Assembly: GCA_038087875.1 (NCBI GenBank)
Contig: CM075977.1
Coordinates: 131,564,001 to 131,628,000, forward strand
Reading direction: 5' to 3'
Origin: Malacoraja senta
Taxonomy: Eukaryota
DNA: 64,000 nt
Part shown: positions 4,171-30,127 of the stretch, one piece after another
Layout of the letters: each line of letters begins with the position of its first letter
Numbering within the stretch: the stretch's first letter is position 1
Program-made: the position numbers and the translations under genes
Notes under the pieces: generated by a model
The model's database searches: none
Seen by the model: the letters and a program-made list of their open reading frames with translations, nothing else
Told to the model about the DNA's origin: nothing

Positions 4171-4287
4171 ATTCCCTCATCATGGTTTTCACCCAAAAGT
4201 TTTAAAGGGTTCTTTAAATTGAAAATCAAACGAATACAACTCTATTATGGAAGAAAGATGCAAGAGAAGACAATAAGTGATATTCCA

Positions 4288-4486: not shown

Positions 4487-4614
4487 AAATGGTATTCCAT
4501 TTGGTTTAAGGATATTTAATTAGCTGAACACTCAAAAAAAATGTGATTACCAAGATGCATTGTGGATTCCTTATCTGTTGATCTTAACTGATTTTGAAAT
4601 TGTCACCAAAATGT

Positions 4615-6044: not shown

Positions 6045-6047
6045 AAA

Positions 6048-6060
6048 TGGGGGCTCGTCC
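6048..6060 (+). promoter_or_regulatory. Primer binding site, tRNA-Pro
   Basis: TGGGGGCTCGTCC matches the first 13 nt of the canonical tRNA-Pro PBS, 3 nt after the LTR end. Confidence 0.85.
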
Positions 6061-6204
6061 TAAACGTTTTTGGGGGGAGGGGGGGTTTGGTAGGCTTCCG
6101 GTGACTAAGGTAGTCTGTGTTGTGTTGTGAGGGAAATTTTTCTTCTCTGTTTGTGATAGCATTGGTGCCCAGGGTTTAGCTCGTGGTTTGGAGCTACATT
6201 TGAA

Positions 6205-8207: not shown

Positions 8208-8257
8208 TAACAGTCCACGACCTCACTAACAAACCTGTCTACGTTTACATCCAAGTC

Positions 8258-8259
<2 letters not shown>

Positions 8260-8302
<43 letters not shown>
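8260..8302. repeat. (TA)n microsatellite
   Basis: About 21 perfect TA units. Confidence 0.95.
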
Positions 8303-8306
<4 letters not shown>

Positions 8307-8469
8307 ATCTCACACACAGCAGTGGTCCCTGCACAGATCCAAGCAGAACTCCATTTGCCACAGACCTCCAGCCTGAATATTCTCCTTCTATTTAACCTAT
8401 ATTCTATCAGTAAGTGCAAAGCCAAAAACAAAGCCCCACGTCCCTAATGCCATCAAGGCAGTTTGGAGT

Positions 8470-8850
8470 TCAGTTTACTTGGTGTTTGTAGTGTTCAATA
8501 GCCTGATGGATGGTGGAAACATGCTGCTCCTGAACCTGGATGTTACAGTTTTCAGAGTCCTATACTTTCTTCCCGATGGCTGGAGTGAAATGAGAGTGTG
8601 ACTAGGGTGGTGTGGGTCTTTGATGATGCAAGTTACCTTTTTGAGGCAGTGTCTCCTCCAGATCCATTCGATGATGAGAAACTCAATACCCATGATGGAC
8701 TGGGCAGTGCTCACCATATTTTGCTATCTCCTTCATTCCAGGGTGTTCGAGCTACTGAACCAAGCCATGATGCAACCAGTTAAAATGCTCCCTACTGTAC
8801 ACCTGTAGAAGTTCCAGAGTGTATTCATCCACATACAGAATCTCCCCAAT
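8470..8850 (-). mobile_element. Rex1/Babar-like LINE fragment
   Basis: ORF 8475-8717 IIKDPHHPSHTLISLQPSGRKYR...RFRSSMFP. Confidence 0.75.
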
Positions 8851-9181
8851 TGAGGTTGGACATGCAAACATCCTCCTGATTCCTATCTACTAACCTCCTT
8901 CAATGGGTGAAGCAGTGCTCTCAACATTGAACAGCTCTTGGGAGAAGCAAGAAAGGACAGAGAAACTACTACTTGAGAAATGTCATGCCAAACTCAAAGA
9001 GGGGCATTCCAGCAATACCACTGGCTACACTGAGTAAATCCTGCAGAAGGTAACTGCCACTGGGTATGAGGCAGGTAGTGAGGAGACAAATAAAGCATAA
9101 AAAATGAAGAGTCGTTCACCTGACACAATTAATTTATTTCTCACTCACAGATGCAATTGACTTACTTAAATATTTACAGCA

Positions 9182-12100
9182 TTTTCTTTCTTTTTTTAAA
9201 TTTATATTAATTGTTTTTATTTTTATTTGAAGCTGTGTACAAAAATATAAACCGCGGCATATGACATAATACATTTATTGTACAGCTTCAATTTTAATTT
9301 TTAGCTAAGATGAAAAAGAAAAAGAGAGAGAAAGTGAAAGAGAAAGTGAATGTGTAAGAATAGAACCCCTAGACTACCAAATTGGTGTAGTCAAAGACTG
9401 AGTAAGTAAAATAAATGAGAAAAACATAAAGAAATAAAAAGACAAAAACAGAAAGAAAAACTAAAAGTGATGATATACCTGCTTCGTATCTCTCCCCACC
9501 CATCACCCAACCCGTAAGTCGGTTTAATTCCAAAGTTGTGTTGCACCATACTATCCTTGTAATGAATCAATGAATGGAATCCATGTCTTCGAAAATTGCT
9601 CTGTTTTTTCTGCTAAGACAAGTCTCATATTTTCAAGATGTAGCGTCTCAGACATGTTTGTAATCCACATTTTAAGAGTGGGGGCAGATGTATTTTTCCA
9701 AAATTTAAGTATTAGTTTTTTCGCCGTTATCAGGCCATAATTAAGGAAACGTCTTTGAAATATTGATTGCTCAGGGCAGGCTTCTGATGTTCCGAAAATA
9801 ATCAGTTCCGTGTGGGGGTCCATTTTTATTTTTAATATTTTTGAGAAAATTTCAAAAATTCCTTTCCAAAAGTTATGTAGTTTTATGCAAGAGGCAAAGG
9901 AATGTGTTATAGTTGCTTCTTGAAGGAGACTTTTGTCACAAATAGGAGATAAATTTGAAAAGATCTTATTCAGTTTAGTCTTTGAGTAGTAGAGTCTGTG
10001 CAGTGTTTTAAATTGGATTAAAATGTGTCTAACATTAATCGAACAATTGTGTATATATAAAAGCTTTTCTTCCCATCTGTCTTTGGGAATTTTTAGGCCT
10101 AGTTCCTCTTCCCAGTCTCTTCTAATTGCGTCTGACGATGGAATTTCTATATTTATACAAATATGATGTTAGATTGTTTGACTCTGAGTTTCTATTCATA
10201 CATTCGTCTAATATATCTGGCAGCAGAGTTTGATAGTCATGTTTTCAAATAGTCTCGAATTTGAAGATATCTAAAATATTGATTACCTTTCAGGTGGTAT
10301 TTCGACTGTAATTTCTGAAATGACAGAAGATTTCCCATCTCGTAGAGATCTCCAAGTTTTTTAATTCCTAGTCTTTCCCAATAAGTAAATGTTTTATCTA
10401 TAATAGATGGCTTAAATGAAGGGTTATTAGCTATTAGTGAGAGAAGAGATAAATTTCTTAGTTTAAAAGTTGATTTTACTTGTCTCCAGATTCGTAAAGT
10501 GCTGTGAATAATCAGATTTTTATCATATAGTGTGTTCTTCAACTTTGTTGGGGAGAGAAGAATCGCGCCTATATTAAAAGTCGAGCAATCCTCTCTCTCC
10601 ATTATTAACCAGTCTACCTGTTGGCATGCGTTATCCAGCCAGTAAATTACATTTTTAATATTCGTTGCCCAATAATAGTATAAGAAATTGGGGAGAGCCA
10701 ATCCGCCCGTTTCTTTGGGTTTGCATAGATGTCCTTTATGAATTCTATGTTTTTATAATTCCAGATAAACTTTGTAATCCGAGAATCAAGATTTAAAAAA
10801 AAAAATTTAGGTATGTATATCGGTATTGATTGAAATAAATAGAAAATTTGTGGGAGGAAGATCATTTTTATAGCATTTATTCTGCCTATTAGAGACATCG
10901 GAAGTGTTTTCCAAAATTGAATAAGAGCGTTTAATTTAGTAACTAAAGGCGGGAAGTTTGCATTGAATAAAGAAGTATATTTTCTGGTTACCTGAACACC
11001 CAGATATTTGAATTTTTCCTTAGCAATTCTGAAAGGGAATTTTAAAAGGTGTGTTGGCTCTTGAGGTTTTATTGCCATAATTTCACTTTTGTTCCAGTTT
11101 ATTCTATATCCTGAAAAGGAACCGAATTCCTCTATAAGATTTAATATATTTGGAATGCTAACTATGGAATTGGTGGTTTATAATAATACATCATCAGCAT
11201 ATAATGATATTTTATTATTGGAGTGTTTAGTATTATAATCATGAAAGTTCGGATGTACTCTTATACTTTCCGCTAAGGGTTCAATCACAAGGGCAAATAA
11301 CAGGGGTGATAATGCACATCCCTGTCTATTGCCCCTGGATAGCTGAAATTTAGGAGAGAGTATGTGGTTAGTCAGTATTCCGGCAGTCGGCCTATCATAT
11401 AATAATTTTATCCATGAAATAAAATTCTCTCCCATCTGAAAATTTTGCAGTACTGTGAAAATATACTTCCATTCTACTTGGTCAAATGCTTTTTCTGCAT
11501 CTAATGAAATAATTGATAAGTCTTCTTCTTTAGTTCTGTATGTGTACATTATGTTAAAAAGGCGTCTCAAATTATCAAACCCCGTTTGATCCGAATGTAT
11601 TAATTTATTAACGTATTTACTTAATCTTCTTGCCAACGTTTTTGCTAGTATTTTCTGTCCTGTATTTAGCAGGGTGATTGCTCTGTATGATCCCAGGTCT
11701 TCTTTTTTGGGTGTAAGTGTGATAGTTGATTCAGCTGGTGTTTGTGGTAATGTATGTCCTTTAAATGCGTATGTATAAAGATTGTGTAAACGTGGGGAAA
11801 TTACCTCGTAAAATCTTTTATAAAATTCGTTACTGAAACCGTCTGGTCCTGGTGTTTTACCGTTCTTCAATGAATTGATTGTCTCTTCTATTTCTTTAAT
11901 TGAATTGTGTGATCCTAATTCCTCTTGTTCCAGCGGATTAAGTGTTGGAAGTTTACAGTTGTCCAGAAAGTTTGTAATTTTTCTGCTTTCTGTTGCTGTT
12001 TTGGATGTGTATAAGTTTTGATAAAATTGGGCAAATCTTTCATTAATGTCTTTTGGAAGCGTTAACAGTTCACCTTTATCTGATATAATTTTTCGGATAG

Positions 12101-13540
12101 TCTGGTCCTTTTCAACTTTTCTCAGCTGGCATGCAAAAAGTTTGTGTGGTTTGTTTTGCTTTTCCTGTTTTGTAATTTGAAATAATCTAATAACTCTTGC
12201 AGAATTTGGTTTAGTTTAAATTTCAATATTGCTATTTTGTTGTGTTTATCTATAGTCGGATCTATCGCGTTTTCTAAATCAAGTTGTCTGATCTGTTCTT
12301 CTAGTTGCAATTGTTCCGTCCTATTCTTTTTATTTTGATAAGCTTGATATGAAATGATAGAACCTCTAATAAAAGCCTTAAAAGATTCCCATAATAGGGA
12401 GGGCGAGATATCTGGGGTATCATTGGTCTCAAAAAAGAGTTCCATCTGTTGTTTTAAGTATTTACAACAGTCCGGATTATTTAGTATTTGAGGATTAAAC
12501 CTCCAAAACGATTTTTTATTAAACATTCCTTCTAGTTTTAAGGAGAAGGTTAGCGGAGAATGATCGGAAATAGTACTATTATGGTATTTAGGGTTAGTTG
12601 TGAAGGGTATTAATTTAGTGTCCACTAGGAAGTAGTCAATACGTGTATAGGTTTTATGTACTGATGAGTAGAAGGAGTATTCTCTTCCGGCAGGGTTTGC
12701 AATCCTCCATACGTCTGTTATATTTGTATTTTTTATATACGTATTTAAAAGTTCACTGGATTTTGATTTTGTATTGTCTCTTGTTGAGCAGATTTATCGA
12801 GGTTTTGATCCAAAACGCAATTGAAATCTCCCCCGATTATCACATTTTGCTGAGTGGACTCAGAAATTATATTCAAGATTTTATTAAAAAATTGTGGGTT
12901 GTCAAAGTTAGGAGCATAAATATTTACCATGGTAAGTGGGGTAGAATGTATCTCCCCAGAGACTATGACATACCTCCTCTCTTTGTCTGCAATGGTGTTT
13001 TTATGTTTAAATGGTATGCCCTTACGGATTATAATTGCAGTGCCTCTGGATTTGGAGAGATAGGAGGAATGATTTGTTTGACCGATCCAATTGGCCTTCA
13101 GCCTGGTCTGAGCTTGAACTTTAAGATGTGTTTCCTGTAAAAATATTATGTTGGCATTGAGTGATTTTAATTGGGCAAGAATCTTACCCCTTTTAATTGG
13201 CTCGTTAGTGCCCCTAATATTCCAGCTACAAAACGTAATTCCTCCAGTTTTCTTTAGAGGGTCGTCTTGCATTGTAACTTACATTGGTTCCTTTATTTCA
13301 GATGGTGCAACACATTTATAGCATTTTCTGTTGCTCACCATTTGATTTGGGAATATATTAACGTTCTTTCATCATCACTAGGGTTAATCCAGTAGTGCCC
13401 CCCAACAGGATTGTAAAAGTACATAATTAAGAAGGCCTGCAACAGATCAAAAAGGAGATTCACCTCCCGCTTTTCAAGGGAAAATCAAAGACAAGCAATA
13501 AATATAATACTGGCCTTGTGCAGATCCAAGCAAAAGAAAA
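9182..13540 (-). mobile_element. L1-clade LINE, 5'-truncated, frameshifted ORF2 (APE endonuclease + RT)
   Basis: SWNIRG...FLQETHL...NIYAPN...GGDFN (12745-13272), SDHSP, KTPGPDGF, SLDAEKAFDQVEW, RQGCALSPLLF, YADD (11178-11870), KYLGV; A-rich tail near 9182-9197. Confidence 0.92.
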
Positions 13541-14728: not shown

Positions 14729-15479
14729 TAAATTGAGGACTAGTTAAAGACACAGAATGCCCTATTTGATTCAATATATTCCTATGTAACCATCAATCAC
14801 CTATAATATACAATGATAAATTGCTGCTTAATGCAAATGATGGCCCACTGGGCCCCTGAAAAATCATTCAAGGAGGTTGTCACCTTGAATGTTACTCATA
14901 GCACCATATCGGCCAGGATATGAAGCAGGCCAGTTTATTTGAGCATTTTGTCAGGTCATAAAATTTGTGACTGTGAATCTTGTCAGGTGTTTTTACACTG
15001 ATAGATCAAGATTTAAATGAATGCTTCACTTCTCTCAGGATTTTAATGCTGTGGGATGCATCTCTCGTCTCTTCCACAGGGAAAACAAAATCTGTGGCTT
15101 GAATTTTAAAGTTTTGAATTATGATTTATCTCCTCATTCTTCCCCGACTATCAATCTGACAGTAATATACAATAAATTTCATGTAATGTTCCAAATTTGG
15201 TCCCACCAGTGAGTTCTAGGTATATTATCTCTGGCGCTGTAAGGCAGTAACTCTGCCGCCCACTTTAGATTAATCACCTGAAAAAAAGCAGTTATATGAA
15301 AGTTACAGGGTTTACATTTCTGTAAATAGGTCAGGAGGGCCTTCAATAAAGTTGTACCCCAAAACAAACATCAGTTTTCCCAATCTTTCCTGCGCAGGTC
15401 TTCTCAAATTAGTGATAGATGTCATAATTAATAATGCCTTTCAATAGTGCAAATGTAAGTGTTTGAGCTCATTTTTAAT

Positions 15480-15806
15480 ACTTTAAACTTTATAGATACT
15501 GTGCGGAAACAGGCCCTTCGGCCCACTGAGTCCGCGCCGACCAACGATCGCCCTGTACACCAACACCATCCTATACACTAGTCAATTTTAAAAATGTTTT
15601 TACAAATGTTTACAACTTACTGAAACCAATTAAGACCTACAAATCTGTACGTCTTGAGTATGGGAGGAAACCAGAGCACTCGGGGAAACCCTCTCTGACA
15701 CAGTGAGAATGTACAAACTCCATACAGACAGCACCCATAGTCAGGATCAAACCTGGGTCTCCGGTGCCTTAAGTCAGCAACTCTACTGCTGCAACACTGT
15801 GCCGCC
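15480..15806 (-). mobile_element. tRNA-derived V-SINE (HE1-like)
   Basis: GGCGGCACAGTG head, GCTGTCTGTATGGAGTTTGTACATTCTC core, GGGCCGAAGGGCCTGTTTCC CR1-type tail. Confidence 0.8.
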
Positions 15807-16869
15807 TCAAAATACAGGTGTGCAAACAAGGGTGCTGGTTTACAAATAAAGACAGTGCTGGTGTAAATCAACAGGTCAGGGAGCATCTCTAGAGTACATG
15901 GATAGGTGACGCTTTGGGTCGGGGCACTTCTCAAGACTGATGGGGGAAGAAAGCAGGAAGAGAGGAGGCTCAAGGCTGACTAGTCATAGGTGGATATAGG
16001 CGAGGTGTCTTTTTGACGGGAAGATGGTTGGACAAAGGCCCATGATAAATAGACAGAAGGTGTGTGGTGAAAGGATTGAAGAGTTGCAAATAACACTGGT
16101 GTTCCCAGGATTAATTTCAGTTCAGTTTAGTTTATTTCACCTGTACCGAGGTACAGTGAAAAACATTTGTTGTGTGCTAACCAGCCAGAGGAAAGACAAT
16201 ACGTGATCACAATCGATCCATTTACAGTGTACAGAAAAATGATAAGGGAATAAAGTTTAGTGCAAGGTAAAGCCAGTAAAGCCAATCAAAGATAGTCGTA
16301 GGGTCCCTGATGAGGTAGATAGTAGTTCAGGACTGCTATTTGTTTACAGTAGGCTGGTTCAGTTGCCTGATAACAGCTGGGAAGAAACTGTCCCTGAATC
16401 TAAATTTGCCAGTAACAGGGTCAAATCAGGCAACACAATGTTAGTCCTCAACATCTGTTGTTCTGTACACTTCCTGTACACAGAAGAAGCACGTCACTGC
16501 CACTCTGAATATAAGGGTTGGTGGAAAGCTTGCTGAAAATATGCATGCACATTTCAAGTCTGAAGTTCCGGCCCAGTCAATGCCAATACAGCCAATATAT
16601 CACACAGCCTAATTTGATTGATTACTTAAACACTATAGCACAGGCATTGGAGAGATACAGTAACTTGATAAACAATAAACAGTGCTTAAAAGGTAGGGAA
16701 TGTTCAATGTTGTTTGATAACATCCAAATTAGGTAAATGTAATCAGTTGAACATTGAGTGTGTTGTGAAGCATTGTTTCTCCTCCCCTTGACTTGCTAAT
16801 TTCTTCAAAACCAGTGACACTTTGGGCAATTCAAATGCTCATCTGGTCACTTCTTAAATACTGCCTTGA

Positions 16870-17345
16870 TTCAGCTTCAACTTTTCACCAGGCCAAGCAT
16901 TCCAGGTACTTATCAGTTTCTGAGTGAAGGTCCCCCTCAAATCTCCTCCAAATTTCTACCTTTCTCAAAATCTATGTCTTCTAATCTTATTTACTTCAAT
17001 ATGGGGAAACAATTCCAGCAGCTTACGCTATCTATATCACTTCATTATTTTATATATCTTTATCATGTCCTTTATTAATCTTCACTGCTCCAAGGAAAAT
17101 AGACCAAGTTTCTCCATTCTTTCCTCGAACTAAACTCTCCAACCAAAGGAACATTATGGTGGAAATCCTCTGTACACTCTTCAGCTCTATCACATGGTGA
17201 CCAGAACGGCATGCAGTATTCCAGATGAGGTCTGACTAAGGTTTTATCAAGTTGGTACATAAGCCCCACTTCTGTATTCAATGCTCTGACTAATGAAGGC
17301 CACTACCCCTCATGCCTTCCTACCATGTGACCTGTGTTTCTCCCT
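16870..17345 (-). mobile_element. CR1 LINE fragment (interrupted by BEL; resumes about 18658-18800)
   Basis: ORF 17075-17281 LVRPHLEYCMPFWSP. Confidence 0.7.
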
Positions 17346-18657
17346 TCAATGATCTAAGGACTTGTATCATTAAGATCGGATAATGGTACAAATTTTGTTG
17401 GAGCAGAAAGAGAATTAAGAGAAGCACTTTTATCAGAATAAAATTCAGAGTGTTATGCATCAGGATGGGATAGAATGGAATTTTAATCCTCTGGCGGGTT
17501 CTCATCACGGCGGTGTTTGGGAACGATTGATCCACATGGTTAGAAATGGGCTACGCTCTGTTCTTAAATAACAAGTTCTGGACGATGAAGGATTGCAAAC
17601 TTTATTTTGTGAAGTTGAAGCAATTTTAAATGATCGACCCATTACTAAGAGTTCCGATGATCCGACCCAATGCTACCACCTGGGCTCTTTGTGAAAGAAG
17701 ATTTGTATATGAGATGCAGATGGAGACAAGTACAATATTTGGCAGATCTTTTTTGGAAAAGATGGACACAAGAATATTTGCCTCTGATCCAAGAACGACA
17801 ATGATGGTTGAAAGGAAGAAGACATTTTATTCCAGGTGATATCGTTTTGGTGGTTGATTCTACTGCACCACGAGGTTCTTGGTTGATGGGAATGATACTG
17901 GAGATCATGCCAGATGTTAAAAGGTTTGGTGCGTATAGTACGACTTCAGACTAAGAACAATGTCTTGGTAAGACCGATAACCAAGATATATCTGCTACTA
18001 GAAGGCGGAAATGAAGATGGAAGAATCGCTAAAGAAGTCTGAATGCTGATACATAATGCTTATTACTTTTGTTTTTTGATATATGTTAAGCTTTTATAGC
18101 TCCTTTTTTAATGTCTATTAGTAATTGCCTCGTTATATACTCAGAACAATTAGGGGCCGGTATGTTGGAGCCATTAAGCTTAACTAAGTTTATTATAGTC
18201 ATGTCTAGTTACCTTTACTTACTATCTGCCTGTGTTAATGTGAGTGGGATTTTATATGTAGTCTGGGGCGTGTTTTTGGCTAGAGGAGTCGGGCGCAGAC
18301 CCTTAGATGATTAGTTAATAGTTTGATGTCGGGGCCATGGGATGAAACCGTTTTCAACCATGACCACAAGCATCAATTGGAACATATATATGTTGTCAGA
18401 CAATGTACTTTTACAAGAAGATGTTTTTAGGATTTATCTGACATGAATGGAACGATGATTAAGAACGGAAAGTTATGAGTTATTTCATTGATTTGTATTA
18501 CTACAATAAAGAAGCTATTAATCAAGAGACTACTTCTGGTAGATTCATCTTTGCTGTTTTAAATGTGTCATGGAGTGCGTGAGACTACTTTTCTAATCCG
18601 ACAAATTAGTGGCTATCGAAGGTTGAACTTTGAGAAGTTGTAAACACCGCCACTACA
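17346..18657 (+). mobile_element. BEL/Pao LTR retrotransposon 3' end (integrase core/C-terminus, PPT, 3' LTR about 18163-18657)
   Basis: Reads IRSDNGTNFVGAERELREAL...WNFNPLAGSHHGGVWERLI...LQTLFCEVEAILNDRPIT...ADLFWKRW across frameshifts; AATTAGGGGCCGG PPT before TGTT...; ends ...CTACA. Confidence 0.85.
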
Positions 18658-20683
18658 CTGAGGTTCCTCTGGTCAATTTTGTTATTTGTATGTCTTAATC
18701 TTATTGGTACTCCTAAAATGCATCATTTCACACTTGATATATTAAAATCCATCTACCATTGATCAGCTCATTTCATCAACATATCAATGCCTCCCTGCAG
18801 CCTTTCGAAAGTTTCAAAGAAAATAAGGTGATGTAGTGAACAAAGAAGCAATGACCAATTGATGTCAATTTTATGTTTTAAAAGCTTCAAAGCTTAAAAT
18901 GGAAAACTGAAGTAGGTTAGAACTGTCTTTCTCTGATTTCCTTGAAATCCTCTCATTTTAACCATAATGTAGTCAAACACCTTAAATACAATCTGAAATC
19001 TAGTCATCTCTAATGATGCTTTGCTCTTAAGCATGTAATACAGCAATTTTATGTTTTTAGTACCAGATCGAGCACACTTCTGAGGTTGGCTAACAACCCA
19101 TTGGGACTGATGATATAATTATCAATACAAAATTGAATGTAACTAATTATAATAAAGTAATATCTGAAACTATACCCAGGGCTAGATTCAAGATCCATTA
19201 TTCTGCTCAAGCAGAACATTTTACCATTCAGCGTCTACTTTCACGTATTAGTAATGATTACTCATTCATAAAGAGCAATCAATTTTTCATATTTAGCAAA
19301 TGTGTACATCAAGAATCTGACTGAAAGACTATTTAATAGCTTTATAATAAACATTTTTACAAAGAACAAATTGGTGAATTAAATTTATTTTAAGGCACAA
19401 TACCTTGAAGAGAGCTGAAACATTCAATCTTCAAATATTTTATGCTGCATATTACTCTAAAGATTTTAGTTTAATTGTGTGACCACAAGGCTTAAAGCTA
19501 ATTTCAATTGACTGTTTATTAACCATATAAAATACAATGATTTGAACTCAGCTTGTTGGATTACTTGTTTTCCCAGGCAACAAATTTAGTACATCGAGTT
19601 CAGGGTAACACAGTGGTGCAGTTGTAGAGTTGCTACCTTCCAGTGGCAGAGACCCCGGTTCCAGATAAAATCACATTGATCAGGTCATAAGAATCAGACA
19701 TTCTCTACACTTTTCATGTGAGCAGGTCAGATATTTCCAGTGTCACATGAACACCTGACAATGTTGGCAATGACACAGCATTTATTTTGAGTAAGGGATT
19801 TAAAGCCCTGTCTCACGGTGCGAGTTGACCCACGAGTGACCCCGAGTGAAAGACTCGTGGTTGCGTTCGAGACTCCAAGTTTATGATCAACCGAGTTTAA
19901 CCGAGTTCCCACGTGTATGTCTAAGTTTGCCGTTTACTTCTCATTTCTGCGATGTTCCAAGTTCCTCTCCCGAGTTACCAAGTTCCTCTCGCGAGTTACT
20001 CTTGAGCCAACCGTGAATGAAGGCCTGTTTTAAGTATCAAATAGAGGAGCTGGACAGCATCTCATACAGTAAGTATATTCTGATTCAGTATTGAAAGTTA
20101 TTCAATTTCAGAACTTTAAAAAACTAGGCAAGATTTCGGCCCCGCACTCGTTGCCATTGTGCAACAAGGAGGCGGTGGCGGCAAAGCAAGTGTTAAAGAA
20201 GAGAGCTCCATCCTGCGGCTTTTTAAAGGTAGAATTCAGCGCGGCAGCATCTATTGATATGACCTACAAAGGGAAAATGCGCACCGTCCAGTGCCAGAGC
20301 TAGGCTGGGATCATTCTCTGCTCTCATCTCTCTCTTTCTGTGTGTGCATTTGCAGGGGGAAGAGCGGTCTACCTCGCTGGGGCACAAGACCTCTGCCGTC
20401 TGCCACTTGCAGCCATCAACTTGTTTGTTCCTTTGGTGCGCCTCATCTGCCCTGCTCCCATCCCAGCGCTGCCCCAGCTCTCTGCCCCATTCTCTTGGAA
20501 ATGTCGCTTCCGCCACTGTAACGAGGAGGGGTCCGGCTGGCTGGCTTGGTGGGTGGGTGGGTGGGTGAGCAGGGAGGGGGAGTGGGTACAAACCACCGAA
20601 TCCATTCTCAAAAGTCGGGCAGAGCCGTGTAGAACTCACGTTTCTCTCTGCTTCATATACGTGGGAATTCCCTCAGTATGGTC

Positions 20684-22232
20684 ACTCAGCGGGCAGGCAG
20701 CATCTCTGGAGAGAAGGAATGGGTGACGGGATGACGTTTAAAATTTATATCATGGGCAAACCATCTTGCCCCAGGCTGCTTTACATTATTTATTGTGTTG
20801 AGTTGTTTGTGAGGCTGGGACATCTCTGAGGGTCGCCACCTTGTAGTGGAGACATATGCGTCTGCCTTGATCCTGTAAGCAGGCCACATGGCAGGAAAGT
20901 CGAGGGGGAGGTCCCTGACAAAGGGCGGCCCAAGAAGATGACCTCAGTGGAACAGGCCGAGGATGGTGTTTGACCGGCGGCTGAGGCGGAAGAAGGCTGC
21001 AGCAGGGAGAGACTCCCAACCGTGGTGGAGCCCATATCATTGGACCCGGGACTGTCAGTGAATGTTGTCAGGTTAAAGAGGGTGGACTTGTCTGTTCTGA
21101 GCAGTCCCTGGGCTTCAGTCAAGGGTCAGTGTGTGGGGCAGTGCCCTGGAGTTTACATCCTGCTGATCCCTGTAGACATCCACCATGGTTCCCCGCTCCC
21201 CATCCCTCTCTCAATGTGTGACGGAGAATGGCCGAGACTCTAGTGTACTGAGTTTGAAGCCATTATCCTGTCAGTGAGGGTGATGAGAAACAGGAAGGAC
21301 AGTGAGTTGTCCCTTACCCCGACGTAAACAGCCCTTTATTCTGGAATCGACACCACTACCTCTGCTGATCTGGTTTAGAGAGGAAAGATCATAAAGCAAG
21401 GTCATATTCAACAAGTGCAGTTTGAGGACATTGGATTTTCCTCTCCACATTTTATTGTTTTTTGTAGCCAGAAAAGTCAAAACATGCAATCATTATTATC
21501 TTTAATTCTTACGTATCTTCGTGATGTAAACATTGTTAATCTCCAGTCAATTATATTCCCTCCTTTACTGAAACAACCCTGACTGATCATCTCTATGTCA
21601 TTGGGTTGGAGAACATGATCCCACAGGTGAACAACAGTTATCTCTCCGACAAACGACTGACTGGCGTCAAAACCTCCACCAACTGAGTCTTGTTCCTGAC
21701 CTAGAATAAACTGACCAGACCCTTTCACAACCTGACCCTTATCACCAACCTTCCGTACACTGCGTCTCCCATTGACCCAGACTGTTATCTCACCCCCTTG
21801 AGACTCCCAGGTCACACAGATGTGTCTCAGTAAAGAATTCATGTCTGGGATGTAAAACTCTGTTATAACATTTCCTAAATACAGCCAGAGTTGTGTTTTA
21901 GATTCTTCCCAAATCAGCAGTTCGTTGTCGGAAAAGCTCGTTGCGTAGGAGAGCACACTGTAAGAGTGAGTCGCTTCAGAGGCTGCCCTGAAACAGACAA
22001 CAAAGGCGGTCAAACTGGTGAAGTCAGGCGCATGCAACCTGACGAAGCTGTTGGATGTTTTGCTTGAAAATACCACTGATTTCGCATCCAATCCTGTAAA
22101 ATGTGAAGAGTTAAGATTGTCATATGTCAGTTTAAAGTTGCTGCAGATGGAGCACAAAGACGCAGCAGAAATTTGGAAAAGTCATCCCGTCACCCATTCC
22201 TTCTCTCCAGAGATGCTGCCTGCCCGCTTAGT
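20684..22232. repeat. 52-bp inverted repeat pair (20684-20735 / 22181-22232) derived from PLE terminal repeat
   Basis: ACTCAGCGGGCAGGCAGCATCTCTGGAGAGAAGGAATGGGTGACGGGATGAC and reverse complement with one mismatch. Confidence 0.9.
21477..22093 (-). CDS. Short pentraxin (C-reactive protein / serum amyloid P-like), terminal coding exon; signal-peptide exon not found
   Basis: Pentraxin signature HICVTWES, first Cys in AFVVCFR, DNELLI, ILGQEQDSVGGGFDASQSFVGEI, LWDHVL, GNIIDW; no stops over about 205 codons; acceptor CTTAACTCTTCACATTTTACAG|GA, phase 1, as in CRP/SAP exon 2; minus-strand AATAAA at 21451-56 and 20789-94. Confidence 0.9.
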
Positions 22233-23329
22233 TAAAGAGTGCCCACGGTAGACTCACGAGACACTAAGGTAAACTCACGGGCCACTACGTTCTTACAACG
22301 AGTTTAAATTTCAAATTTTAACCTCAAGAGTACATTTTACTCGTGGAAAAGTTTAAACATGTTTGAATTTTTCCAAGAGTTAACAAGTGTCACGGGTACC
22401 TGCCGTTAGCGTTAAGAGTCGCTAAGTTGCGTCCACGAGTTCCGACGTTCCCGCTACGTTAATCGTACGTGATTACCACGAGTTAAATTTATTTTAAGCT
22501 CGGGGTACCTCGTGGGTCAGCTCGCACCGTGAGACAGGGGTTTTAGCATCCAACCTATAACTGTCATTGAAAATTTACAGCGGAATCAGGGTGCATTGCA
22601 CGACTTTGTTTTAGTCTCTTGTTCACGAAAATTGTAACTGGTTACCTGTGACTGTGACCAACTGGTTAACTGGCCACAATCATTACTTCTGTGAAATTAA
22701 GAAACTAAGAGATAAGGACAGTAGGCAGAACTGGCTCCATAAGAGGCAGGAAGAAAGAGCATGCTACCTAAAGTTGGAGAATTTATTACACTGGGCAGAG
22801 TATTCTTGGATTGGCAGAGTTCGTTTTTCTTGGACAGGAGCAGGCTGTGGGGTGATCTGATAGAGGCATACAAATTAGGTGGATTTATCCACAAAGGGGT
22901 GGATAATGAGAAACATTTCCCCACAGTGCAAACCGGAGGATCGTTGTCCTCTTGAATCGAGCACCCTTGGAAGTGGTGGAGGCAGACAGTTGAAAGTATT
23001 TGGACAAGCATTTGTATCACAAAGGCATAAAAGGCTTCAGACGAAGTGCTGGTAAATGAGATCAGTATAGCTACCACTGGGAGTGTAGATCATGCATTTA
23101 CTGCCCAGATATATCGAACTGGCCAGTAACCAAAAGCCGTTCAGAACACTTTACTACCAAAATGTATCACAGATAGGCATTTGCTGCTTTCCCACCCAGC
23201 AGAGCAATTGCCTGTTTCGCACACATGTACCTGACAGATCACTAATACATTATCTTCATGGTCTATGTTTTTATTTCCTTAACAACTGACTATACACAAA
23301 GGTCTCCCAAAGATTCATCCAACAGTTAG

Positions 23330-23620
23330 GAGTGGCATAGTCATGCAGCTGGCAGAGCTTCTGCCTCGCAGTGCAAGAGACCTGCATTCATTCCTGACTT
23401 TGGTGCTGTCTGTGTGGAGTTTGCACATTCTCCCTGTGACCACCTGGGTTTCTTCCCATATCCAAAAGACGTGCGGGTTTGTAGGTTAATTGGCCTCTGT
23501 AAATTGCCCCAGTGTGTAAGGAGTGGATGCGAACAGAGAATAACATAGAATTAGTGATCAATGGTCGGCGTGGACCTGATGGGCCAAATGCCCTGTTTCC
23601 ATGCTGTATCTCTCAATCAA
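23330..23620 (+). mobile_element. V-SINE (HE1-like)
   Basis: GTGCTGTCTGTGTGGAGTTTGCACATTCTCCCTGTGACC core and CCTGTTTCCATGCTGTATCTC tail. Confidence 0.8.
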
Positions 23621-24683
23621 TTAATCAACGTTTTAAGTGAATATGGAAGCAGGAAAGTTGAAGAGAAGGGCAAGAACAAAAAGGATAAGTCCATGATAGG
23701 GTAAAAAGTCGAGTTATTAAATGACAGAGAGCTGATTAGGCAAGCAGGAGGTGCAGCTGTGTTTCCAGCATTTTCTGTTTTTATTTTAATAAAATATTCT
23801 CCTTTTGTCTAACTAGGCAAGTGTCAGAAAATTTCAACATATGTTCCCTTACATTGGACCATTTTTTGAAATTGATGACAAAGACAGAAATGCTGGAAGA
23901 TCTCACCCAGTCAAGCAGCATCTGTGGAAAGAAGAACCTGCTAACATTTCAGGAGGAAGGACCATCATCTGAACTTCTTACGTTTTTTGAGACTGATGAG
24001 ATAGTTATCATATGTACTAGAAATAGCATGCAATATCAAAATTTAGACAGAAAAAGGCACCAAGAAATTACTTTCACCTCTTTGTCAAGAGCAAAAGCAC
24101 CAGTAGAAGCGGGGACAGTTCAAATGACCACCTAAGTTTGCTCCAGCATTCAATAAGATCACTGCTGATCTGATCTTAGCCTCAACTTCACTTTCTTGCC
24201 TGGCCTTCGTAACTCCTGCTTTCTGATGGCAGAATATGATAGAGATATTAAATGACAGAGGACTGATTAGACAAGCAGGAGGTGCGGTGATGGGAGAAGT
24301 AAAGATAACAAAAATGGATTTGGAGAATTTAAATTAAATAAAATTGATTAATTGAATAATTGCTAATCAGAATCAAACAAATACTGGCATTTTGTTTGTC
24401 TCTGATTGGCCCAGTCCACTTCAAAGGACAGTTTAGAGTCAACCACCATAATGGGTCTGGAGTCACATGACCAGTCAGGACATATAAGTACAACAAGTGC
24501 CCTTTGGCCCAACGCTTCAATGGTGATCAAGATGCACCAGCTAAGCTAGTCCCATTTGCCCATGTTTTGTCCTTCTACCCGTGACCTGCGTGGGTTTTCT
24601 CGAGGTGCTCCAGAATTTCTCCCACAGTACAAAGACAGAGGTTTGTAGGTTAATTGGCTTGGTAAAATTGTAAATTGCCCTTA

Positions 24684-25488
24684 TGGGTTTGTCCCACTTA
24701 GGCGATGTTTCAGCGGACTGCCGGCGACTGTCAAGTTGTCGGCAGTCGGCAACCGGGAACTGGAACGTCGACTTGCAGAGTGGAACATACACACACAAAC
24801 ACAAACACATCGCAAAGGCGGGGGCCATGGCAAGCGGAGGAGCGCTGTCTGAAATTCATACGGTATAAAGCCAAGGTGATACAGACACACAACGAGATGA
24901 ACAGGAATGTTGGCGCTGTAATTAAGACGGCTAGCACAGTGTATGGTCAGTCCTTTAAACGAGGGGAGAAGGGGGGAGAAGGGGGGAGGGGGGGGAGAAG
25001 GGGGGAGCAGGAATGGATACAACTTTTAAGAAGACAGATAACTTTTAATAAGCCAGAGATACACAACTGTGAAGTTCGGCAGACATTTAACATAACCGGT
25101 CGGTTATCCTTGGTTCTGAAAACTCCTGCTTACAATTTTTCCCCCAAATGACCAGTCAGCAAAGGCGATGAACTTAAATTACCTACGACTACCGCGACGA
25201 CCCATTACTACATGGCGACCCCACTACAACAGCACCTATGACTACAGGATTATTGATTTTCTCCATGGTGACCAATTTTTGGTCGCAGAAAAATTTTCAA
25301 CATGTTGAAAAATTTGCGGCAACCATAATGAGGCCGCGAACAATTCCCAGAATGCAGGAACTCCTCGCGACCATGAAGGATACTCACCAGAGACCATTAG
25401 CGCACATTTGCCGACCATGTGGCGACCATGTGGTGAGCGCAGAGTCTCCTGCACTCGCCTCTATAGTCGCCTAAGTGGGACAGGCCCA
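24684..25488. mobile_element. PIF/Harbinger-like MITE (805 bp) inserted in a V-SINE (about 24570-25582)
   Basis: TGGGTTTGTCCCACTTAGGCGA...TCGCCTAAGTGGGACAGGCCCA; TTA on both flanks; SINE sequence continues on both sides. Confidence 0.85.
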
Positions 25489-25909
25489 TTAGTATTAGTG
25501 TGCAGGGATTGCTGGTCGATCGGCTCAGTGGGCTGAAGGGTTTGTTTCCGCGCTGTATCTCTGAACTCTAAACTAAACTAAAATAATAACCCGACAAATC
25601 TCCCCTGCACTCTCTTCAATGCAATCATGTCCCAACCTACCGTGTGGGGAACAGAACTGCAAAGAGCACTCCAGCTGTGGCCTAACCAATGTTTTATAAA
25701 ATATAAAATTCTTACTCATATTTTATGCCCCATAACATCCTTGCTCTTATATTTTATGACCCAGCTAATGATGATATATATTCCATATACATTATTCACA
25801 ATGTAACTGTTTGTATCTGTAACACTATATTCTTCACTCTGTTTATTTTCTCTTTTGCACAACCTCATGCATGGTATAATTTATGTGGATAGCACATAAA
25901 ATTGTTTCT

Positions 25910-26450
25910 TGGCGGCACAGTAGCGCAGGTGGTAGCTTTTCAGCACCAGCGACACAGGTTTGATTCTGACCTCAGGTGCTGTTTGTGTGGACCTCCCATG
26001 TTCTCCCTGTGACCGTGTGGCTTTCCTTCTGATGGTTTTGTTTCTTCCCATATCCCCAAGACTTGCGGGTTGATAGGTTATTAGGCCTCTGTAAATCATA
26101 GCTAGTGTTAAGGGAGCGGATGTGAAAGCGGGATAACATAGAACGAATATGAACAAGTGACCAATGTTCAACGTGGACTTAGTGTTAAAGAAGGAACTGC
26201 AGATGCTGGAAAATCGAAGGTACACAAAAATGCTGGAGAAACTCAGCGGGTGCAGCAGCATCTATGGAGCGAAGGAAATAGGTAACGTTTCGGGCCGAGT
26301 CTGAAGAAGGGTTTCGGCCCGAAACGTTACCTATTTCCTTCGCTCCATAGATGCTGCTGCACCCGCTGAGTTTCTCCAGCATTTTTGTGTACCTTCAACG
26401 TGGACTTGTTGGGCCGAAGTCCCAGCTTCTCTCAATTCTACTCAGCTCAA
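25910..26450 (+). mobile_element. V-SINE containing a palindromic PLE-derived insertion (26188-26396)
   Basis: SINE head GGCGGCACAGTAGCGCAG; perfect 83-bp inverted arms 26216-26298 / 26314-26396; AACGTGGACTT repeated on both sides. Confidence 0.85.
26301..26329 (+). ncRNA. Minimal type I hammerhead-ribozyme-like core of PLE terminal repeat
   Basis: CUGAAGA-A-GGGU(UUCG)GCCC-GAAACGUU: conserved CUGAnGA and GAAA boxes, stem II tetraloop hairpin, palindromic ACGU stem III. Confidence 0.65.
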
Positions 26451-27995
26451 TAAATACTTGAGTTCCTCAACATTCCTCAGTGGTCTACTATTCATAAGGT
26501 GCATGACCTCACCCTTATGAGGAGTAAATTCAATTTTGCATCGCTCTGTCCATCACCATCTACTGATCAATATTGTGCTCAAGGGATAGTTCTACCTGCA
26601 GGATATTAAAGTAATTGAATTACATGGGCCTTTCTGTGAAAAGATGTTTAACGTCCCATATGGCTCCTTCATTCTTGCAATCTTCTCGTCGATCAAGAGG
26701 ACGCATGTAACAAGTGCCAAAGCATAATTAGTGAAAAAAAATCAAATTTCAGATGTTAGAATGTAAATAAAATGAAATATTTTCTCTTATGAAGCTATGA
26801 GAAATTTTAGTGAATTAGGTGTCAATAGGAGCTGGCAAACACAGTGAAAAAGAGAATTTGGTTGGTTTCAATTTTTGTTGATGTCGGAACCTTTAATACA
26901 ACATCATGTCAGCTGCTATTTCTCCAGTGAAACATCTGATTACTCAAACAGATGAAAACCCTTCTGTTTCAACCTTCAATGAATTTAAAGTAGCTCAGAA
27001 CAGAAGGTTGATCATTTTAGCGCTCCTATTTACCAGCAGACAAAAGGGAATAGGAAGAGCATGGAAATAAGGTTATAAAGAAGGCTGTTAGAATAGCAAA
27101 GACAAAATATCAAATGAACTTCAAGGAATATTAAAAAATCACCAATATAACAGTGACTCAAGACCATTTATGAATGAAAACAAAATAGCAGCTGTTACTA
27201 AGATGGTCACGTTAGATATTTTGACAGTTTTGTCCAAAGAGGGAGACTCAATTGCAGATAGTTTTAAGAGTGCATTTGAGATTTTAAAAAGATATTTTAA
27301 AAGTAAACCAGCTGAATTTAAGGTGTAGTTTGGTTCGTTCCCAGAAGGGCATGATAGAAGAAGTGCTAATATCCAAACATAAAAGTAATAAGATGGGATC
27401 CATATCTTAAAAACTAGAGGCGGAGCTAATACAGGGCATTCTGGAGTGCTCAGCTGCCTGGGATAGAAAAGCCAGGAAAATATTTCTAAATGGTTGGAAA
27501 AGACTGCAAGAAAACCTATTTAACATGCATTGTTAAAAAGCTGGGGATTTTTTTAAGTAGCTGAAAGAATATGCAGGGAAAATGCATTGAACTTTGACTC
27601 ACAGAAGTCTAGAAATGAATGAAAAACATGTGCTGGTGCAACAGGCAGCATCTCTGGGCGACATGGATAGGTGACGTTTCAAGTCGGAACTCTTCTTCAA
27701 ACTGATTGAGGTGGGGTGGGGACGGGAGGGGGAAGCTGAAAAAGAGGTGGGTGTGGGATATACCCTTGCAAGAGGTGGGTAGATACAGGTCAGGGTGGTT
27801 TAATTAGAAGATGGGTGGATGAAGGATATCGATAAAAAGGAGATAATAGGAATGAAATGAAGCAGAGTAATGCTGCCTGCCAAACTGAGAAATGCCAGCA
27901 CTTTTTTTTTTTTTTGTAAACCTGAATCTGCAGTTCCTTGTGCCTAGAAATGAACGCCACATGAGGAATGCATGACAAAGGTCTATGTATCAAAG

Positions 27996-28277
27996 GGCAG
28001 CATGGTGGCACAGTGGTAGAGTTGCCTCCTTACAACACCAGAAACCTGGGTTTGATGCTGACTCTGGGTGCTTGTCTGTATGGAGTTTGTACATTCTCTA
28101 CGTGACCTGCATGTTTTTCCCCCCGGGAACGCCAGTTTCCTCCGATACTCCAAAAATGCATAGGGTTGTAGGTCAATTGGCTGCTTAAAATTGTAAATTA
28201 TATGTAAGATCGCTGGTCAGCGCAGACTCAGAGGGCCGAAGGGCCTGTTTCCATGCTGTATCTCTAAACTAAACTGG
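27996..28277 (+). mobile_element. V-SINE (HE1-like)
   Basis: GGGCAGCATGGTGGCACAGTGGTAGAG head, core, (TAAAC)n tail. Confidence 0.8.
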
Positions 28278-28337
28278 AATGAGGACCTGCACAGCAAATG
28301 GATTACATGGTGCTATCAAATACGGGATAGGAACTAA

Positions 28338-28653
28338 AAGCCCTGTTCCACTGTATGAGTTAATTCAAGAGTTCTCCCGAGTTTGCCCTGATTTGAACTC
28401 GGAGATTTATGGTAATGGCCACTCGTAGGTACTCAGGGCTCTCGTGGACATTTTTCAACATGTTGAAAAATCTTCACGAGTCTTCCCGAGCTTACCGTGT
28501 TTCCCGAGTACCTGCCGTTAGCATTACGAGCCGCTAAGAGACGTCCCCGAGCTCTGACGTACCCGCTACGTACATTCTACGTGCTTCCACGAGTTAGATT
28601 TTTTTTAAACTCGGGAGAGCTCTTGAATGAACTCGTACAGTGGGACAGGGCTT
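28338..28653. mobile_element. PIF/Harbinger-like MITE (316 bp)
   Basis: AAGCCCTGTTCCACTGTATGAGTTAATTCAAGAG...CTCTTGAATGAACTCGTACAGTGGGACAGGGCTT; TAA at 28335-37 and 28654-56. Confidence 0.85.
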
Positions 28654-30127
28654 TAACTGAAGTTTTTCAGGCGAAAGGTAAATTGGTAATTTGTCCCAGG
28701 CATCTATACTGTGAACCCTCTTGTTTATAATGCACTGAAGCAAGACTAGGCCGGTAGAGTGAAATAGTTTTTATTTACAGAAAACAAAACTAAAACTCGT
28801 GAAAACCACGTGCCTAGCTGAGCTTACAAACACAGCTCCTGTCGCTGGGAGGAGTGCTGATAACTAGCTAAAAGCTCGCGAACTAACCTCTGTGGTCACG
28901 TGAAGGGCCAAACAATGATGAGGGTTCTGACTTCCCAGCCCCACCACTAGGTGCCGCTACAGGACCCCCTCCCCCCCCCCCCCCCCCAGAACCAGAGGAA
29001 AGGAAACGAGCGGGAGTCCGAATCAGGCGGCCAGACCGAGTGAAGACAGGGGGAACCGGCATAACATGTACAACCGGCACAACAGGCGGAACAGGCACAA
29101 CAGGTGCAACCAGCGAAAGCGGGATAGCCAGCGGACGACCTCTACGCCGGGGTTGGGCCACCAAAATACAGATGGGTGGGCTTGAGGCGGGCCGCCGAAA
29201 CAATCTCCTCACGGCCCCCGACATCCAAAATAAAAGTCGCGATGCCAGGCCGCAACACCTGGAAAGGACCCTCATTAGGCCGCTGCAGCGGAGTCCGGTG
29301 CGAGTCCCTGCGGAACTAAAAGGCAGTCCTTGAGCGCAGGCGGAACATAAGAAGGAGCAACACCGTGGCGAGAGGTCAGAACAGGAGCCAGTCCACCCAC
29401 TTTCTCCCGAAGGTGCGCCAGCACAGACGAAGTGGGCTCCTGCGGCCCCCGAACCGCAGGAAGGAAATCACCGGGCACCTTCAGCGTGGAGCCATAAACC
29501 AGGTCCACAGAAGACATGTCCAAATCCGCCTTAGCGGCCGTGCGGATTCCCAGCAACACCCATGGCAACTCGTCCACCCAATCCGGGCCTGTGAGGCGCG
29601 CTTTCAACGCGGACTTCAGATGCCGGTGAAACCGCTCAACCAACCCGTCGGCCTGTGGATGGTACGCACTTGTGTGATGCAGCTGCGCACCGTACAGCTG
29701 AGCCATGGCTGACCACAGGGCAGAGGTGAACTGAGCACCGCGGTCTGAGGAGATGTCAGCAGGAACACCAAAACGTTCAGGCAGCGGAATGGCCTCGGGC
29801 CACCTCGTGAAACGGTTCACAATCATCAGCAAGTGGGTAGCACCCTGGGACATCGGCAGAGGATCCACCAGGTTGACATGAATGTGCTCGAACCGGTGTT
29901 GAGGGTCGGCGAAATCTTGGAGCGGTGCACGTACATGCCGCTGGAACTTGGACGTCTGGCAGGGAATGCAGGCCCTGGCCCAGGCCCTGGCCCCAACCTG
30001 CTTGCGGAGGCCATGCCAGACAAACTTGGCCGCCACCAATGCAGAAGTCGCCCGGATGGGAGGGTGGGCCAGCCCGTGAATGGAGTCAAACACACGCTGT
30101 TGCCAACCCGCTGGGACGATGGGCAAG

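What the first reader, a model, noticed from the sequence alone, without database searches (positions are those of the whole stretch)
19803..22542. Intact CRP/SAP-like pentraxin exon carried inside a Harbinger-like DNA transposon (Pack-type gene capture)
Seen: a 2,740-bp segment bounded by TIRs (32/34 identical, extending to about 45 bp) with TTA on both sides. Its right arm (22397-22505) is homologous to the empty 316-bp MITE at 28338-28653. Inside lies an uninterrupted pentraxin exon with splice acceptor, about 85 nt of upstream intron, stop codon and downstream AATAAA signals, but no signal-peptide exon and no transposase. Established: TTA/TAA target duplications characterise PIF/Harbinger elements; short pentraxins have a leader exon plus one large phase-1 exon; gene-fragment capture is well known in plant Pack-MULEs but much less documented in vertebrates. 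Inference: this innate-immune lectin exon was captured with its intron piece (from DNA or unspliced RNA) and could be dispersed as a portable terminal exon that adds a pentraxin domain to any gene it lands in. This would offer a route to pentraxin expansion or fusion in cartilaginous fish.
Basis: partly seen in the sequence, partly recalled or inferred. Interest (0 to 1): 0.88.

Follow-up and report, generated by a model that had tools for sequence, protein, structure and literature searches.

The report
Skate transposon carrying a pentraxin exon
A 2.7-kb cut-and-paste (Harbinger-type) jumping gene in a skate genome carries the main coding exon of an innate-immune pentraxin gene and has spread it to tens of copies, a kind of gene capture well known in plants and rare in vertebrates, but the copied exon looks like an unexpressed, drifting passenger.

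Summary
Window 19803-22542 is bounded by 45-nt terminal inverted repeats (40/45) and TTA on both sides. It contains an intact pentraxin exon 2 (minus strand, 21480-22093; Pfam 7.7e-54) with its splice acceptor, 61 nt of intron, the stop codon and two AATAAA signals. There is no leader exon and no transposase.

The Pack-type capture reading is supported.
- Two other skate species have one contig joining the two flanks without the element.
- Leucoraja erinacea has the same composite element on another chromosome, with a different flank.
- The resident two-exon parental gene lies next to TRIT1 in three skates.
- Contig depths suggest about 50-100 cargo copies in the window's species and fewer in three others.

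The internal part is a patchwork of parental-locus pieces and repeats. At least three joints show short microhomology, which suggests template-switch repair.

The "portable pentraxin exon" idea is not supported.
- Cargo copies diverge as fast in coding as in non-coding DNA (dN/dS 0.6, not different from 1).
- The Leucoraja copy carries two frameshifts.
- PolyA RNA reads of a related skate all carry parental-type letters and splice to the normal leader.
- No high-identity fusion proteins were found.

This scan had already flagged Pack-Harbingers in this genome, including a second pentraxin copy 5.8 Mb away.

The parts
19800..19802 (.). Left target-site duplication, TTA
   Evidence: the same TTA follows the right end
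19803..20070 (+). Left arm of the Harbinger-type element, with the left TIR at 19803-19847
   Evidence: TIR pair. 88% identical to L001 11564-11805, with the same inner boundary. Contig depth 420,000-557,000 against about 17 for single-copy DNA. CNCGAGT motif at 18.7 per kb
20071..20683 (.). Region b: internal repeat of unknown origin, absent from the Leucoraja copy and from all parental loci
   Evidence: depth 7,800-57,000
20684..20746 (+). Inner inverted-repeat arm, left: half of an abundant palindromic repeat plus 18 nt
   Evidence: 63 nt, 92% to 22170-22232; joined to the next segment across a shared AAATTT
20741..21066 (-). Segment d: DNA from 2.6-5 kb downstream of the parental pentraxin gene, in the same order and orientation as the exon
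   Evidence: 90% to L003 17174-17493; 94% and 89% to L004 15901-15786 and 14910-14699
21067..21299 (-). Parental 3' flank (21067-21119) plus a 180-bp stretch (21120-21299) shared with the Leucoraja copy but absent from all parental loci
   Evidence: parental-type RNA reads skip 21111-21300
21300..21476 (-). Captured 3' UTR with AATAAA at 21451-21456 and 21335-21340
21477..22093 (-). Intact pentraxin exon 2 (204 codons plus TGA; phase-1 start)
   Evidence: Pfam PF00354 E 7.7e-54; 82% identical to the A. radiata SAP-like protein P0001; 91-93% nucleotide identity to parental loci
22094..22154 (-). Captured 3' end of parental intron 1 with polypyrimidine tract and AG acceptor (11-nt deletion relative to the other copies)
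22153..22232 (-). High-copy repeat fragment that forms the right inner inverted-repeat arm (22170-22232)
   Evidence: depth rises from 900 to 12,800 and then 48,000 across 22124-22187
22233..22542 (+). Right arm of the Harbinger-type element, with the right TIR at 22498-22542
   Evidence: 78% to the MITE at 28492-28654; CNCGAGT motif at 9.7 per kb
22543..22545 (.). Right target-site duplication, TTA
28338..28653 (+). Empty 316-bp MITE of the same family, flanked by TAA/TAA

Best explanation
Window 19803-22542 is a non-autonomous PIF/Harbinger-type DNA transposon of the Pack type. Its internal part is host DNA copied from the short-pentraxin gene that lies next to TRIT1 in skates.

Shown:
- The unit has TIRs and a TTA duplication.
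- It is absent from the orthologous site in two related species.
- It occurs with a different flank on another chromosome of Leucoraja erinacea.
- Its cargo is multi-copy.
- The cargo derives from the last 61-72 nt of intron 1, exon 2, the 3' UTR and downstream DNA of the parental gene.
- The cargo copies form one clade that branches outside the Leucoraja + Amblyraja parental pair.

Inferred:
- One old capture of several kb happened before the Leucoraja/Amblyraja split. The likely route is template switching during double-strand-break or gap repair after excision, because the internal segments meet at short microhomologies (ACTG.., AAATTT, GT).
- Different internal deletions then gave the window form and the Leucoraja form.
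- An autonomous Harbinger elsewhere supplies the transposase and Myb-like protein, which recognise the TIRs and the repeated CNCGAGT subterminal motifs. This kept mobilising the element until recently.

The pentraxin exon itself is a passenger. It is intact here because the copy is young, not because it is used.
For: TIR and TSD. All five Harbinger-like termini in the window sit next to TTA or TAA.

Empty sites: contig 9 of run X3 (1949 nt) and contig 24 of run X7 (1836 nt) each run 19303-19790 and then 22538-23100 with 19 letters between. In the window's own species the flank contigs match perfectly and stop at 19802 and 22521.

Second locus: L001 9547-10962 matches window 22497-21067 at 92.5%, and 11564-11805 matches 20070-19805 at 88%. 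Its end reads ...ACAGGGCCA|TAA followed by an unrelated flank.

Parental loci L002, L003 and L004 lie next to TRIT1, have a leader exon, and match the cargo at 91-93%. Segment d is collinear with DNA downstream of the parental gene in L003 and L004.

Copy number: in run X1, cargo contigs of 61-287 nt with 0-5 differences have depth 900-1790, against 17 for the single-copy flank.

ML tree: (window, L001) 97%; (L. erinacea parent, A. radiata parent) 92%.

Microhomology at junctions. CNCGAGT motif: 10-19 per kb in the arms against 0.16 per kb elsewhere.

Passenger status: window against L001 gives dN/dS 0.6 (16.5 N, 7.5 S; binomial p 0.2-0.3), with coding divergence 3.95% against non-coding 4.5%. 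L001 has two 2-nt deletions in the ORF. RNA reads are 100% parental-type at 21836, 21843, 22025, 22028 and 21319, and 54 of 54 splice to the leader ...GIYLPGSDCA.
Against: - No autonomous partner or transposase was identified, so the superfamily call rests on the TSD and TIR pattern only.
- I could not read the 19 letters at the empty sites. This is about 15 more than a clean single-TTA site predicts, so the exact target duplication is unverified.
- Copy number comes from k-mer depth of short contigs, not from counted loci with both TIRs.
- The Leucoraja copy lacks its right TIR (a SINE and an inverted partial arm lie there), so only one of its ends shows a different flank.
- RNA evidence comes from one polyA run of another species, of which 6% was sampled.
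- The tree node placing Rhinoraja outside has only 58% support.
Confidence: 0.85

Rival explanations
1. Composite (macro-)transposon: two separate MITEs inserted on either side of the parental pentraxin segment, and the outer TIRs were then used together. On this reading the capture was not a repair or template-switch event.
For: The right arm (310 bp) is as long as the complete 316-bp MITE and aligns with it across the central palindrome. TTA sits at its inner boundary (22231-22233). An old MITE fragment lies in parental intron 1, about 220 nt upstream of the cargo boundary, in both A. radiata and L. erinacea.
Against: The inner ends of both arms are no more TIR-like than shuffled sequence. 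The intron MITE is only 76-81% identical and is oriented the other way. No MITE lies at either cargo boundary in the four parental loci. The interior is a patchwork of non-adjacent pieces joined at microhomologies.
Confidence: 0.1
2. Working exon-shuffling module: the captured exon, with its acceptor and polyA signals, is used as an alternative terminal exon of host genes and is kept intact by selection.
For: The ORF of 204 codons is intact. Ligand-binding motifs are retained (SDNE, GQEQDS, HICVTWES). The acceptor and AATAAA signals are good. A scan note reports another copy inside an MCC intron (unchecked).
Against: dN/dS is 0.6 and not distinguishable from 1, and coding divergence about equals non-coding. 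The L. erinacea copy is frameshifted twice. No element-type RNA reads appear among 819 laid, and every read that runs past the splice site (54) continues into the normal leader exon. No fusion protein exceeds 57% identity among the representatives.
Confidence: 0.05
3. A resident pentraxin gene that merely happens to lie between two unrelated MITE halves.
For: The two arms share only the 45-nt TIR, and the window is full of MITEs.
Against: There is no leader exon in 64 kb. The whole 2.74 kb is missing at the same site in two species. The same arm-cargo junctions occur at another locus in L. erinacea. The syntenic resident gene sits next to TRIT1 elsewhere.
Confidence: 0.02

Closest known systems
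Pack-TYPE transposons of plants (Pack-MULE, Pack-CACTA, and Pack elements of hAT and PIF/Harbinger; PMC8903248, PMC5861414)
   Same: A non-autonomous TIR element with no transposase. Its interior is host gene fragment(s) with intron and flanking DNA and an identifiable parental gene. It has a TSD, multiple copies, and a patchwork interior.
   Different: The host is a vertebrate (a skate). The cargo is a complete terminal coding exon with its splice acceptor, amplified to tens of copies. No expression or small-RNA role is shown. The cited survey covers plants only; it does not mention animals at all.
Gene-fragment capture by Helitrons in bats and Xenopus (PMC4224331, PMC12001565) and transduplication in C. 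elegans Turmoil-1 (PMC2572040)
   Same: Animal transposons that carry and amplify host gene fragments.
   Different: Those are rolling-circle elements, or elements with the captured sequence inside their ITRs. Here a cut-and-paste Harbinger-type element with a TWA duplication carries the cargo between short arms.
Tourist-like / Harbinger MITEs
   Same: A 3-bp TTA/TAA duplication, GC-rich TIRs of the ..GCCCTGTC.CAC.. type, repeated subterminal motifs, and very high copy number of the arms.
   Different: About 2.2 kb of unrelated DNA lies between the arms, instead of a 300-bp body.
Short pentraxins (CRP, SAP, mucosal pentraxin)
   Same: The exon encodes a full pentraxin domain that is 82% identical to the skate SAP-like protein P0001, and it has the same phase-1 exon structure.
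   Different: There is no signal-peptide exon or promoter, it lies outside the pentraxin cluster, and it is not expressed in the data available.

Membership tests
PIF/Harbinger superfamily (non-autonomous member) | 3-bp target-site duplication TWA | tested here: met
   TTA on both sides. Four other family termini in the window sit next to TTA or TAA. The L001 end is followed by TAA.
PIF/Harbinger superfamily (non-autonomous member) | Terminal inverted repeats shared with a multi-copy family | tested here: met
   45-nt TIR, 40-41/45. Arm depth is more than 20,000 times single copy. A related 316-bp MITE lies in the window.
PIF/Harbinger superfamily (non-autonomous member) | Autonomous partner encoding a DDE transposase and a Myb-like protein with matching TIRs | not testable with these tools
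   No skate genome could be searched by DNA, and the window holds no such ORF (one search found only retroelement domains).
PIF/Harbinger superfamily (non-autonomous member) | Insertion polymorphism (occupied against empty orthologous site) | tested here: met
   Single contigs in species B and D bridge 19790 to 22538. The letters at the joint were not seen.
Pack-TYPE transposon | Interior derived from a host gene whose parental copy lies elsewhere | tested here: met
   91-93% identity to the TRIT1-adjacent pentraxin gene in three skates, including intron, UTR and downstream DNA.
Pack-TYPE transposon | No transposase inside | tested here: met
   ORF list. The only Pfam-positive ORF is the pentraxin.
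Pack-TYPE transposon | At least two copies carrying the same cargo at different genomic sites | tested here: met
   Window and L001 have different flanks. Depth implies tens of copies. A scan note reports a further copy 5.78 Mb away (unchecked).
Short pentraxin gene (functional member) | Pentraxin domain with the HxCxS/TWxS signature | tested here: met
   PF00354 E 7.7e-54; HICVTWES.
Short pentraxin gene (functional member) | Leader (signal-peptide) exon and transcription | tested here: not met
   No leader in the window. RNA reads are parental-type only.
Penelope-like element hammerhead repeat (proposed for the inner inverted repeat) | Match to a hammerhead ribozyme model | tested here: not met
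   An Rfam scan of 15000-32000 at E up to 1 gave no hammerhead family. The family consensus does contain a CTGAAGA...GAAA-like core (loose ends), so the attribution remains a lead.

The most novel reading that the evidence does not exclude
Skate Harbinger elements form an active, vertebrate Pack system that repeatedly captures host exons. This scan has flagged pentraxin, ZIC5-like, IGSF10 and a signal-peptide exon. Some pentraxin-carrying copies that landed in introns would then be spliced as alternative terminal exons and produce lineage-specific pentraxin-tailed proteins.
Probability: 0.08. Interest if true: 0.85.

Novelty: new variant of a known kind. Interest (0 to 1): 0.6.

Why it matters
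Capture and amplification of host gene fragments by cut-and-paste DNA transposons is a major route of gene shuffling in plants. My literature searches found it documented in animals only for Helitrons and one nematode element. This case has several rare strengths:
- an identifiable parental gene;
- an occupied and an empty site across species;
- two structural variants that trace back to one capture;
- a copy number of tens.

It therefore gives a tractable vertebrate system for asking how Pack elements acquire DNA. It is also a caution for annotation: NCBI calls the Leucoraja copy a 'mucosal pentraxin-like' gene. It does not currently show a new immune function.

Tried and rejected
- Leader exon: tblastn with the relatives' leader peptide and blastn-short with parental exon 1 gave only chance matches in the window and in L001.
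- Composite of two complete MITEs: the inner ends of the arms score no better than shuffles against the TIRs.
- Hammerhead or Penelope identity of the inner repeat: no Rfam hit.
- Host gene around the insertion: the ten longest ORFs are retroelement pieces or carry no Pfam domain (RT, integrase, endonuclease, SCAN), so the context stays undetermined.
- Fusion proteins: an exhaustive phmmer search found no hit above 57% identity.
- Runs X18 and X24, listed as RNA, were flagged as probably DNA and gave nothing on expression.
- The search of earlier findings by sequence with region b gave nothing.
- The exact letters of the empty sites could not be seen, because the joint table was flooded by the abundant palindromic repeat.
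- The origin of region b (20071-20683) and of the 180-bp stretch (21120-21299) remains unknown.
Full report
**What is there**

The window comes from a skate. The closest proteins are from Amblyraja radiata, Leucoraja erinacea and Rhinoraja longicauda.

- The segment 19803-22542 is bounded by terminal inverted repeats. The repeat finder reports 45 nt at 91%. Inside the element I count 40/45, and 32/34 over the first 34 nt.
- TTA lies on both sides.
- The minus strand carries an uninterrupted pentraxin exon, 21480-22093 plus TGA. PF00354 scores E 7.7e-54.
- The exon is preceded by ttttacag|GA, a phase-1 acceptor, and followed by AATAAA at 21451-21456 and 21335-21340.
- The right arm matches the 316-bp MITE at 28338-28653 at 78%.
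- All five Harbinger-like termini in the window abut TTA or TAA.
- The arms are rich in a CNCGAGT motif: 10-19 per kb against 0.16 per kb elsewhere.
- No leader exon exists in the 64 kb, and the pentraxin is single-copy in the window.

**It is an insertion, and it moves as a unit**

Public contigs were laid on 19300-23100.

- The best holder (run X1, organism A) has flank contigs with no differences. They stop at 19802 and start at 22521, which is expected where a unique flank runs into a high-copy TIR.
- In two other species, one contig each covers 19303-19790 and then continues at 22538-23100 with 19 letters between. These are run X3 record 9 (1949 nt) and run X7 record 24 (1836 nt).
- These are empty orthologous sites, with flanks 3-5% diverged from the window. 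I could not see the joint letters, so a single TTA is not verified.

The L. erinacea protein P0020 ('mucosal pentraxin-like', 154 aa, 93% identical) lies on a 45.8-Mb chromosome, not on the 33-Mb chromosome that carries the pentraxin cluster.

- Its locus L001 holds the same composite. L001 9547-10962 matches window 22497-21067 at 92.5%, and 11564-11805 matches 20070-19805 at 88%.
- The left end reads ...ACAGGGCCA|TAA and is followed by a flank unrelated to the window's.
- The right TIR is missing in L001. A SINE and an inverted partial copy of the arm lie there instead.

**Parental gene**

- P0001 (A. radiata), P0005 (R. longicauda) and P0262 (L. erinacea) are two-exon genes with the leader MKPFVTIVLVIGIYLPGS.., and each is the last pentraxin before TRIT1.
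- Window 22144-21300 matches them at 91-93%, and 21119-21067 continues into their 3' flank.
- Homology to intron 1 ends at 22154. That is 61 nt in the window and 72 nt in L001, because the window has an 11-nt deletion.
- L001 continues for another 0.65 kb of contiguous parental downstream DNA, and then joins the left arm across an imperfect ACTG.T.T.AG.TG microhomology.
- The window lacks that stretch. Instead it carries segment d (20741-21066), which matches DNA 2.6-5 kb downstream of the parental gene in L. erinacea and A. radiata, in the same order and orientation. Segment d is joined across GT and AAATTT microhomologies.
- The two forms share the right junction, the 180-bp extra stretch 21120-21299, and the left-arm boundary.
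- The simplest history is one capture of several kb followed by different internal deletions.
- Region b (20071-20683) and the inner inverted repeat (20684-20746 / 22170-22232) are not parental. The inverted repeat consists of halves of a very abundant palindromic repeat (depth about 2.6-4.4 million).

**Copy number**

- In run X1 the single-copy flank contig has depth 17.1.
- Contigs lying wholly inside the cargo, with 0-5 differences from the window, have depths 900.6 (287 nt, 21875-22161), 1789.6 (21773-21865), 1280.6, 1731.6 and 1398.9. That is roughly 50-100 copies.
- In three other species, individual cargo contigs reach 4-11 times the single-copy depth, and binned sums reach up to about 60 times.
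- These are depth ratios of short contigs, not counted loci.
- A note of this scan reports a second pentraxin-carrying Harbinger 5.78 Mb away on the same chromosome (unchecked). Other notes report Pack-Harbingers with ZIC5-like and IGSF10 cargo in this genome (unchecked).

**Age**

- In an ML tree of the 0.9-kb shared block, the two element copies group together (97%).
- The L. erinacea and A. radiata parental genes group together (92%) to the exclusion of the elements. R. longicauda falls outside (58%).
- The capture therefore predates the Leucoraja/Amblyraja split, or came from another lineage.
- The empty sites and the near-identical high-depth contigs show much later transposition.

**Is the exon used?**

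- Window against L001 gives dN/dS 0.6 (16.5 non-synonymous and 7.5 synonymous changes). This is not different from neutrality (binomial p 0.2-0.3).
- Coding divergence (3.95%) equals non-coding divergence (4.5%).
- L001 has two 2-nt deletions in the ORF.
- PolyA RNA reads of a related skate (run X21) cover the exon. All of them show the parental letters at the diagnostic sites 21836, 21843, 22025, 22028 and 21319.
- Those reads also skip 21111-21300, which the parental loci lack. All 54 loose ends at the acceptor read the normal leader ...GIYLPGSDCA with agreement 1.
- That species has cargo copies in its DNA at about 6-25 times single-copy depth.
- An exhaustive phmmer search of 1.84 billion representatives found no protein above 57% identity, so no annotated fusion carries this exon.
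- The exon is therefore best read as a young, still intact passenger.

**Mechanism**

Shown:
- a TIR- and TSD-bounded mobile unit;
- the host origin of the cargo;
- a patchwork interior with microhomology joints.

Inferred:
- acquisition by template switching during repair of the gap left by excision, as proposed for Pack-MULEs and for filler DNA (my own knowledge);
- mobilisation in trans by an autonomous Harbinger, which was not found here.

A composite of two whole MITEs was considered. The inner arm ends are not TIR-like beyond chance, and no MITE flanks the segment in four parental loci. An old, oppositely oriented MITE fragment does lie 220 nt upstream in intron 1.

**Comparison and novelty**

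- The element fits the definition of Pack-TYPE elements, which are described for plants and include PIF/Harbinger (PMC8903248; the paper does not mention animals).
- Animal precedents I found are Helitron captures (PMC4224331, PMC12001565) and Turmoil-1 in C. elegans (PMC2572040).
- My searches found nothing on Harbinger capture in cartilaginous fish.
- It is a new variant of a known kind. It interests transposon biologists and is a caveat for annotation. It is not evidence of a new immune gene.

Noticed in passing
window 26216-26396: A perfect 83-nt inverted repeat with a 15-nt loop (100% complementary). It belongs to the hugely abundant palindromic repeat whose halves bracket the cargo. Rfam gives only sub-threshold miRNA-hairpin matches and no hammerhead.
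   Followed up: partly
L005 11813-16493 (Rhinoraja longicauda): A 4.68-kb insertion beginning TG and ending CA, with a CCTAC duplication (LTR-retrotransposon-like), sits inside exon 2 of a second, 99.9% identical copy of the TRIT1-adjacent pentraxin gene. The annotated 226-aa protein treats it as an intron, which is probably an annotation artefact.
   Followed up: partly
L002 and L005 (R. longicauda, about 50 kb apart): The pentraxin-TRIT1 block is present twice at 99.9% identity. This is either a very recent segmental duplication or an assembly duplication.
   Followed up: no
L001 9077-9650 (L. erinacea): The right end of the Leucoraja element lacks its TIR. Two copies of the subterminal 110 bp face each other across a SINE, and both are cut at the same point. 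How this arose is unexplained.
   Followed up: partly
L001 4931-5075: A 145-bp palindromic mini-element. Inner arms AAAAGTTCCCACGGTAGACTCAC are bounded by TTA/TAA and set within inverted halves of the abundant repeat. It reproduces the repeat/right-arm junction seen at window 22214-22264.
   Followed up: partly
window 24684-25488: An 805-bp element of another Harbinger-like family (TIR TGGGCCTGTCCCACTTAGGCGA) flanked by TTA/TTA. Solo termini of similar type lie at 13557 and 43563, next to TAA.
   Followed up: partly
L002/L003 exon 1-intron 1 boundary (locus positions about 10064): The parental pentraxin genes appear to use a GC-AG intron (exon 1 ends ...AGTGCAG, and the intron begins GCYAGT). 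This is consistent with the spliced RNA reads.
   Followed up: no
P0005 (R. longicauda, 'LOW QUALITY PROTEIN'): The protein model ends ...NDRDDQSGLFQ as if 2 nt were deleted, although the locus DNA is in frame. The same frameshifted tail occurs in the Leucoraja element copy P0020, so the model may have been shaped by element-type evidence.
   Followed up: no
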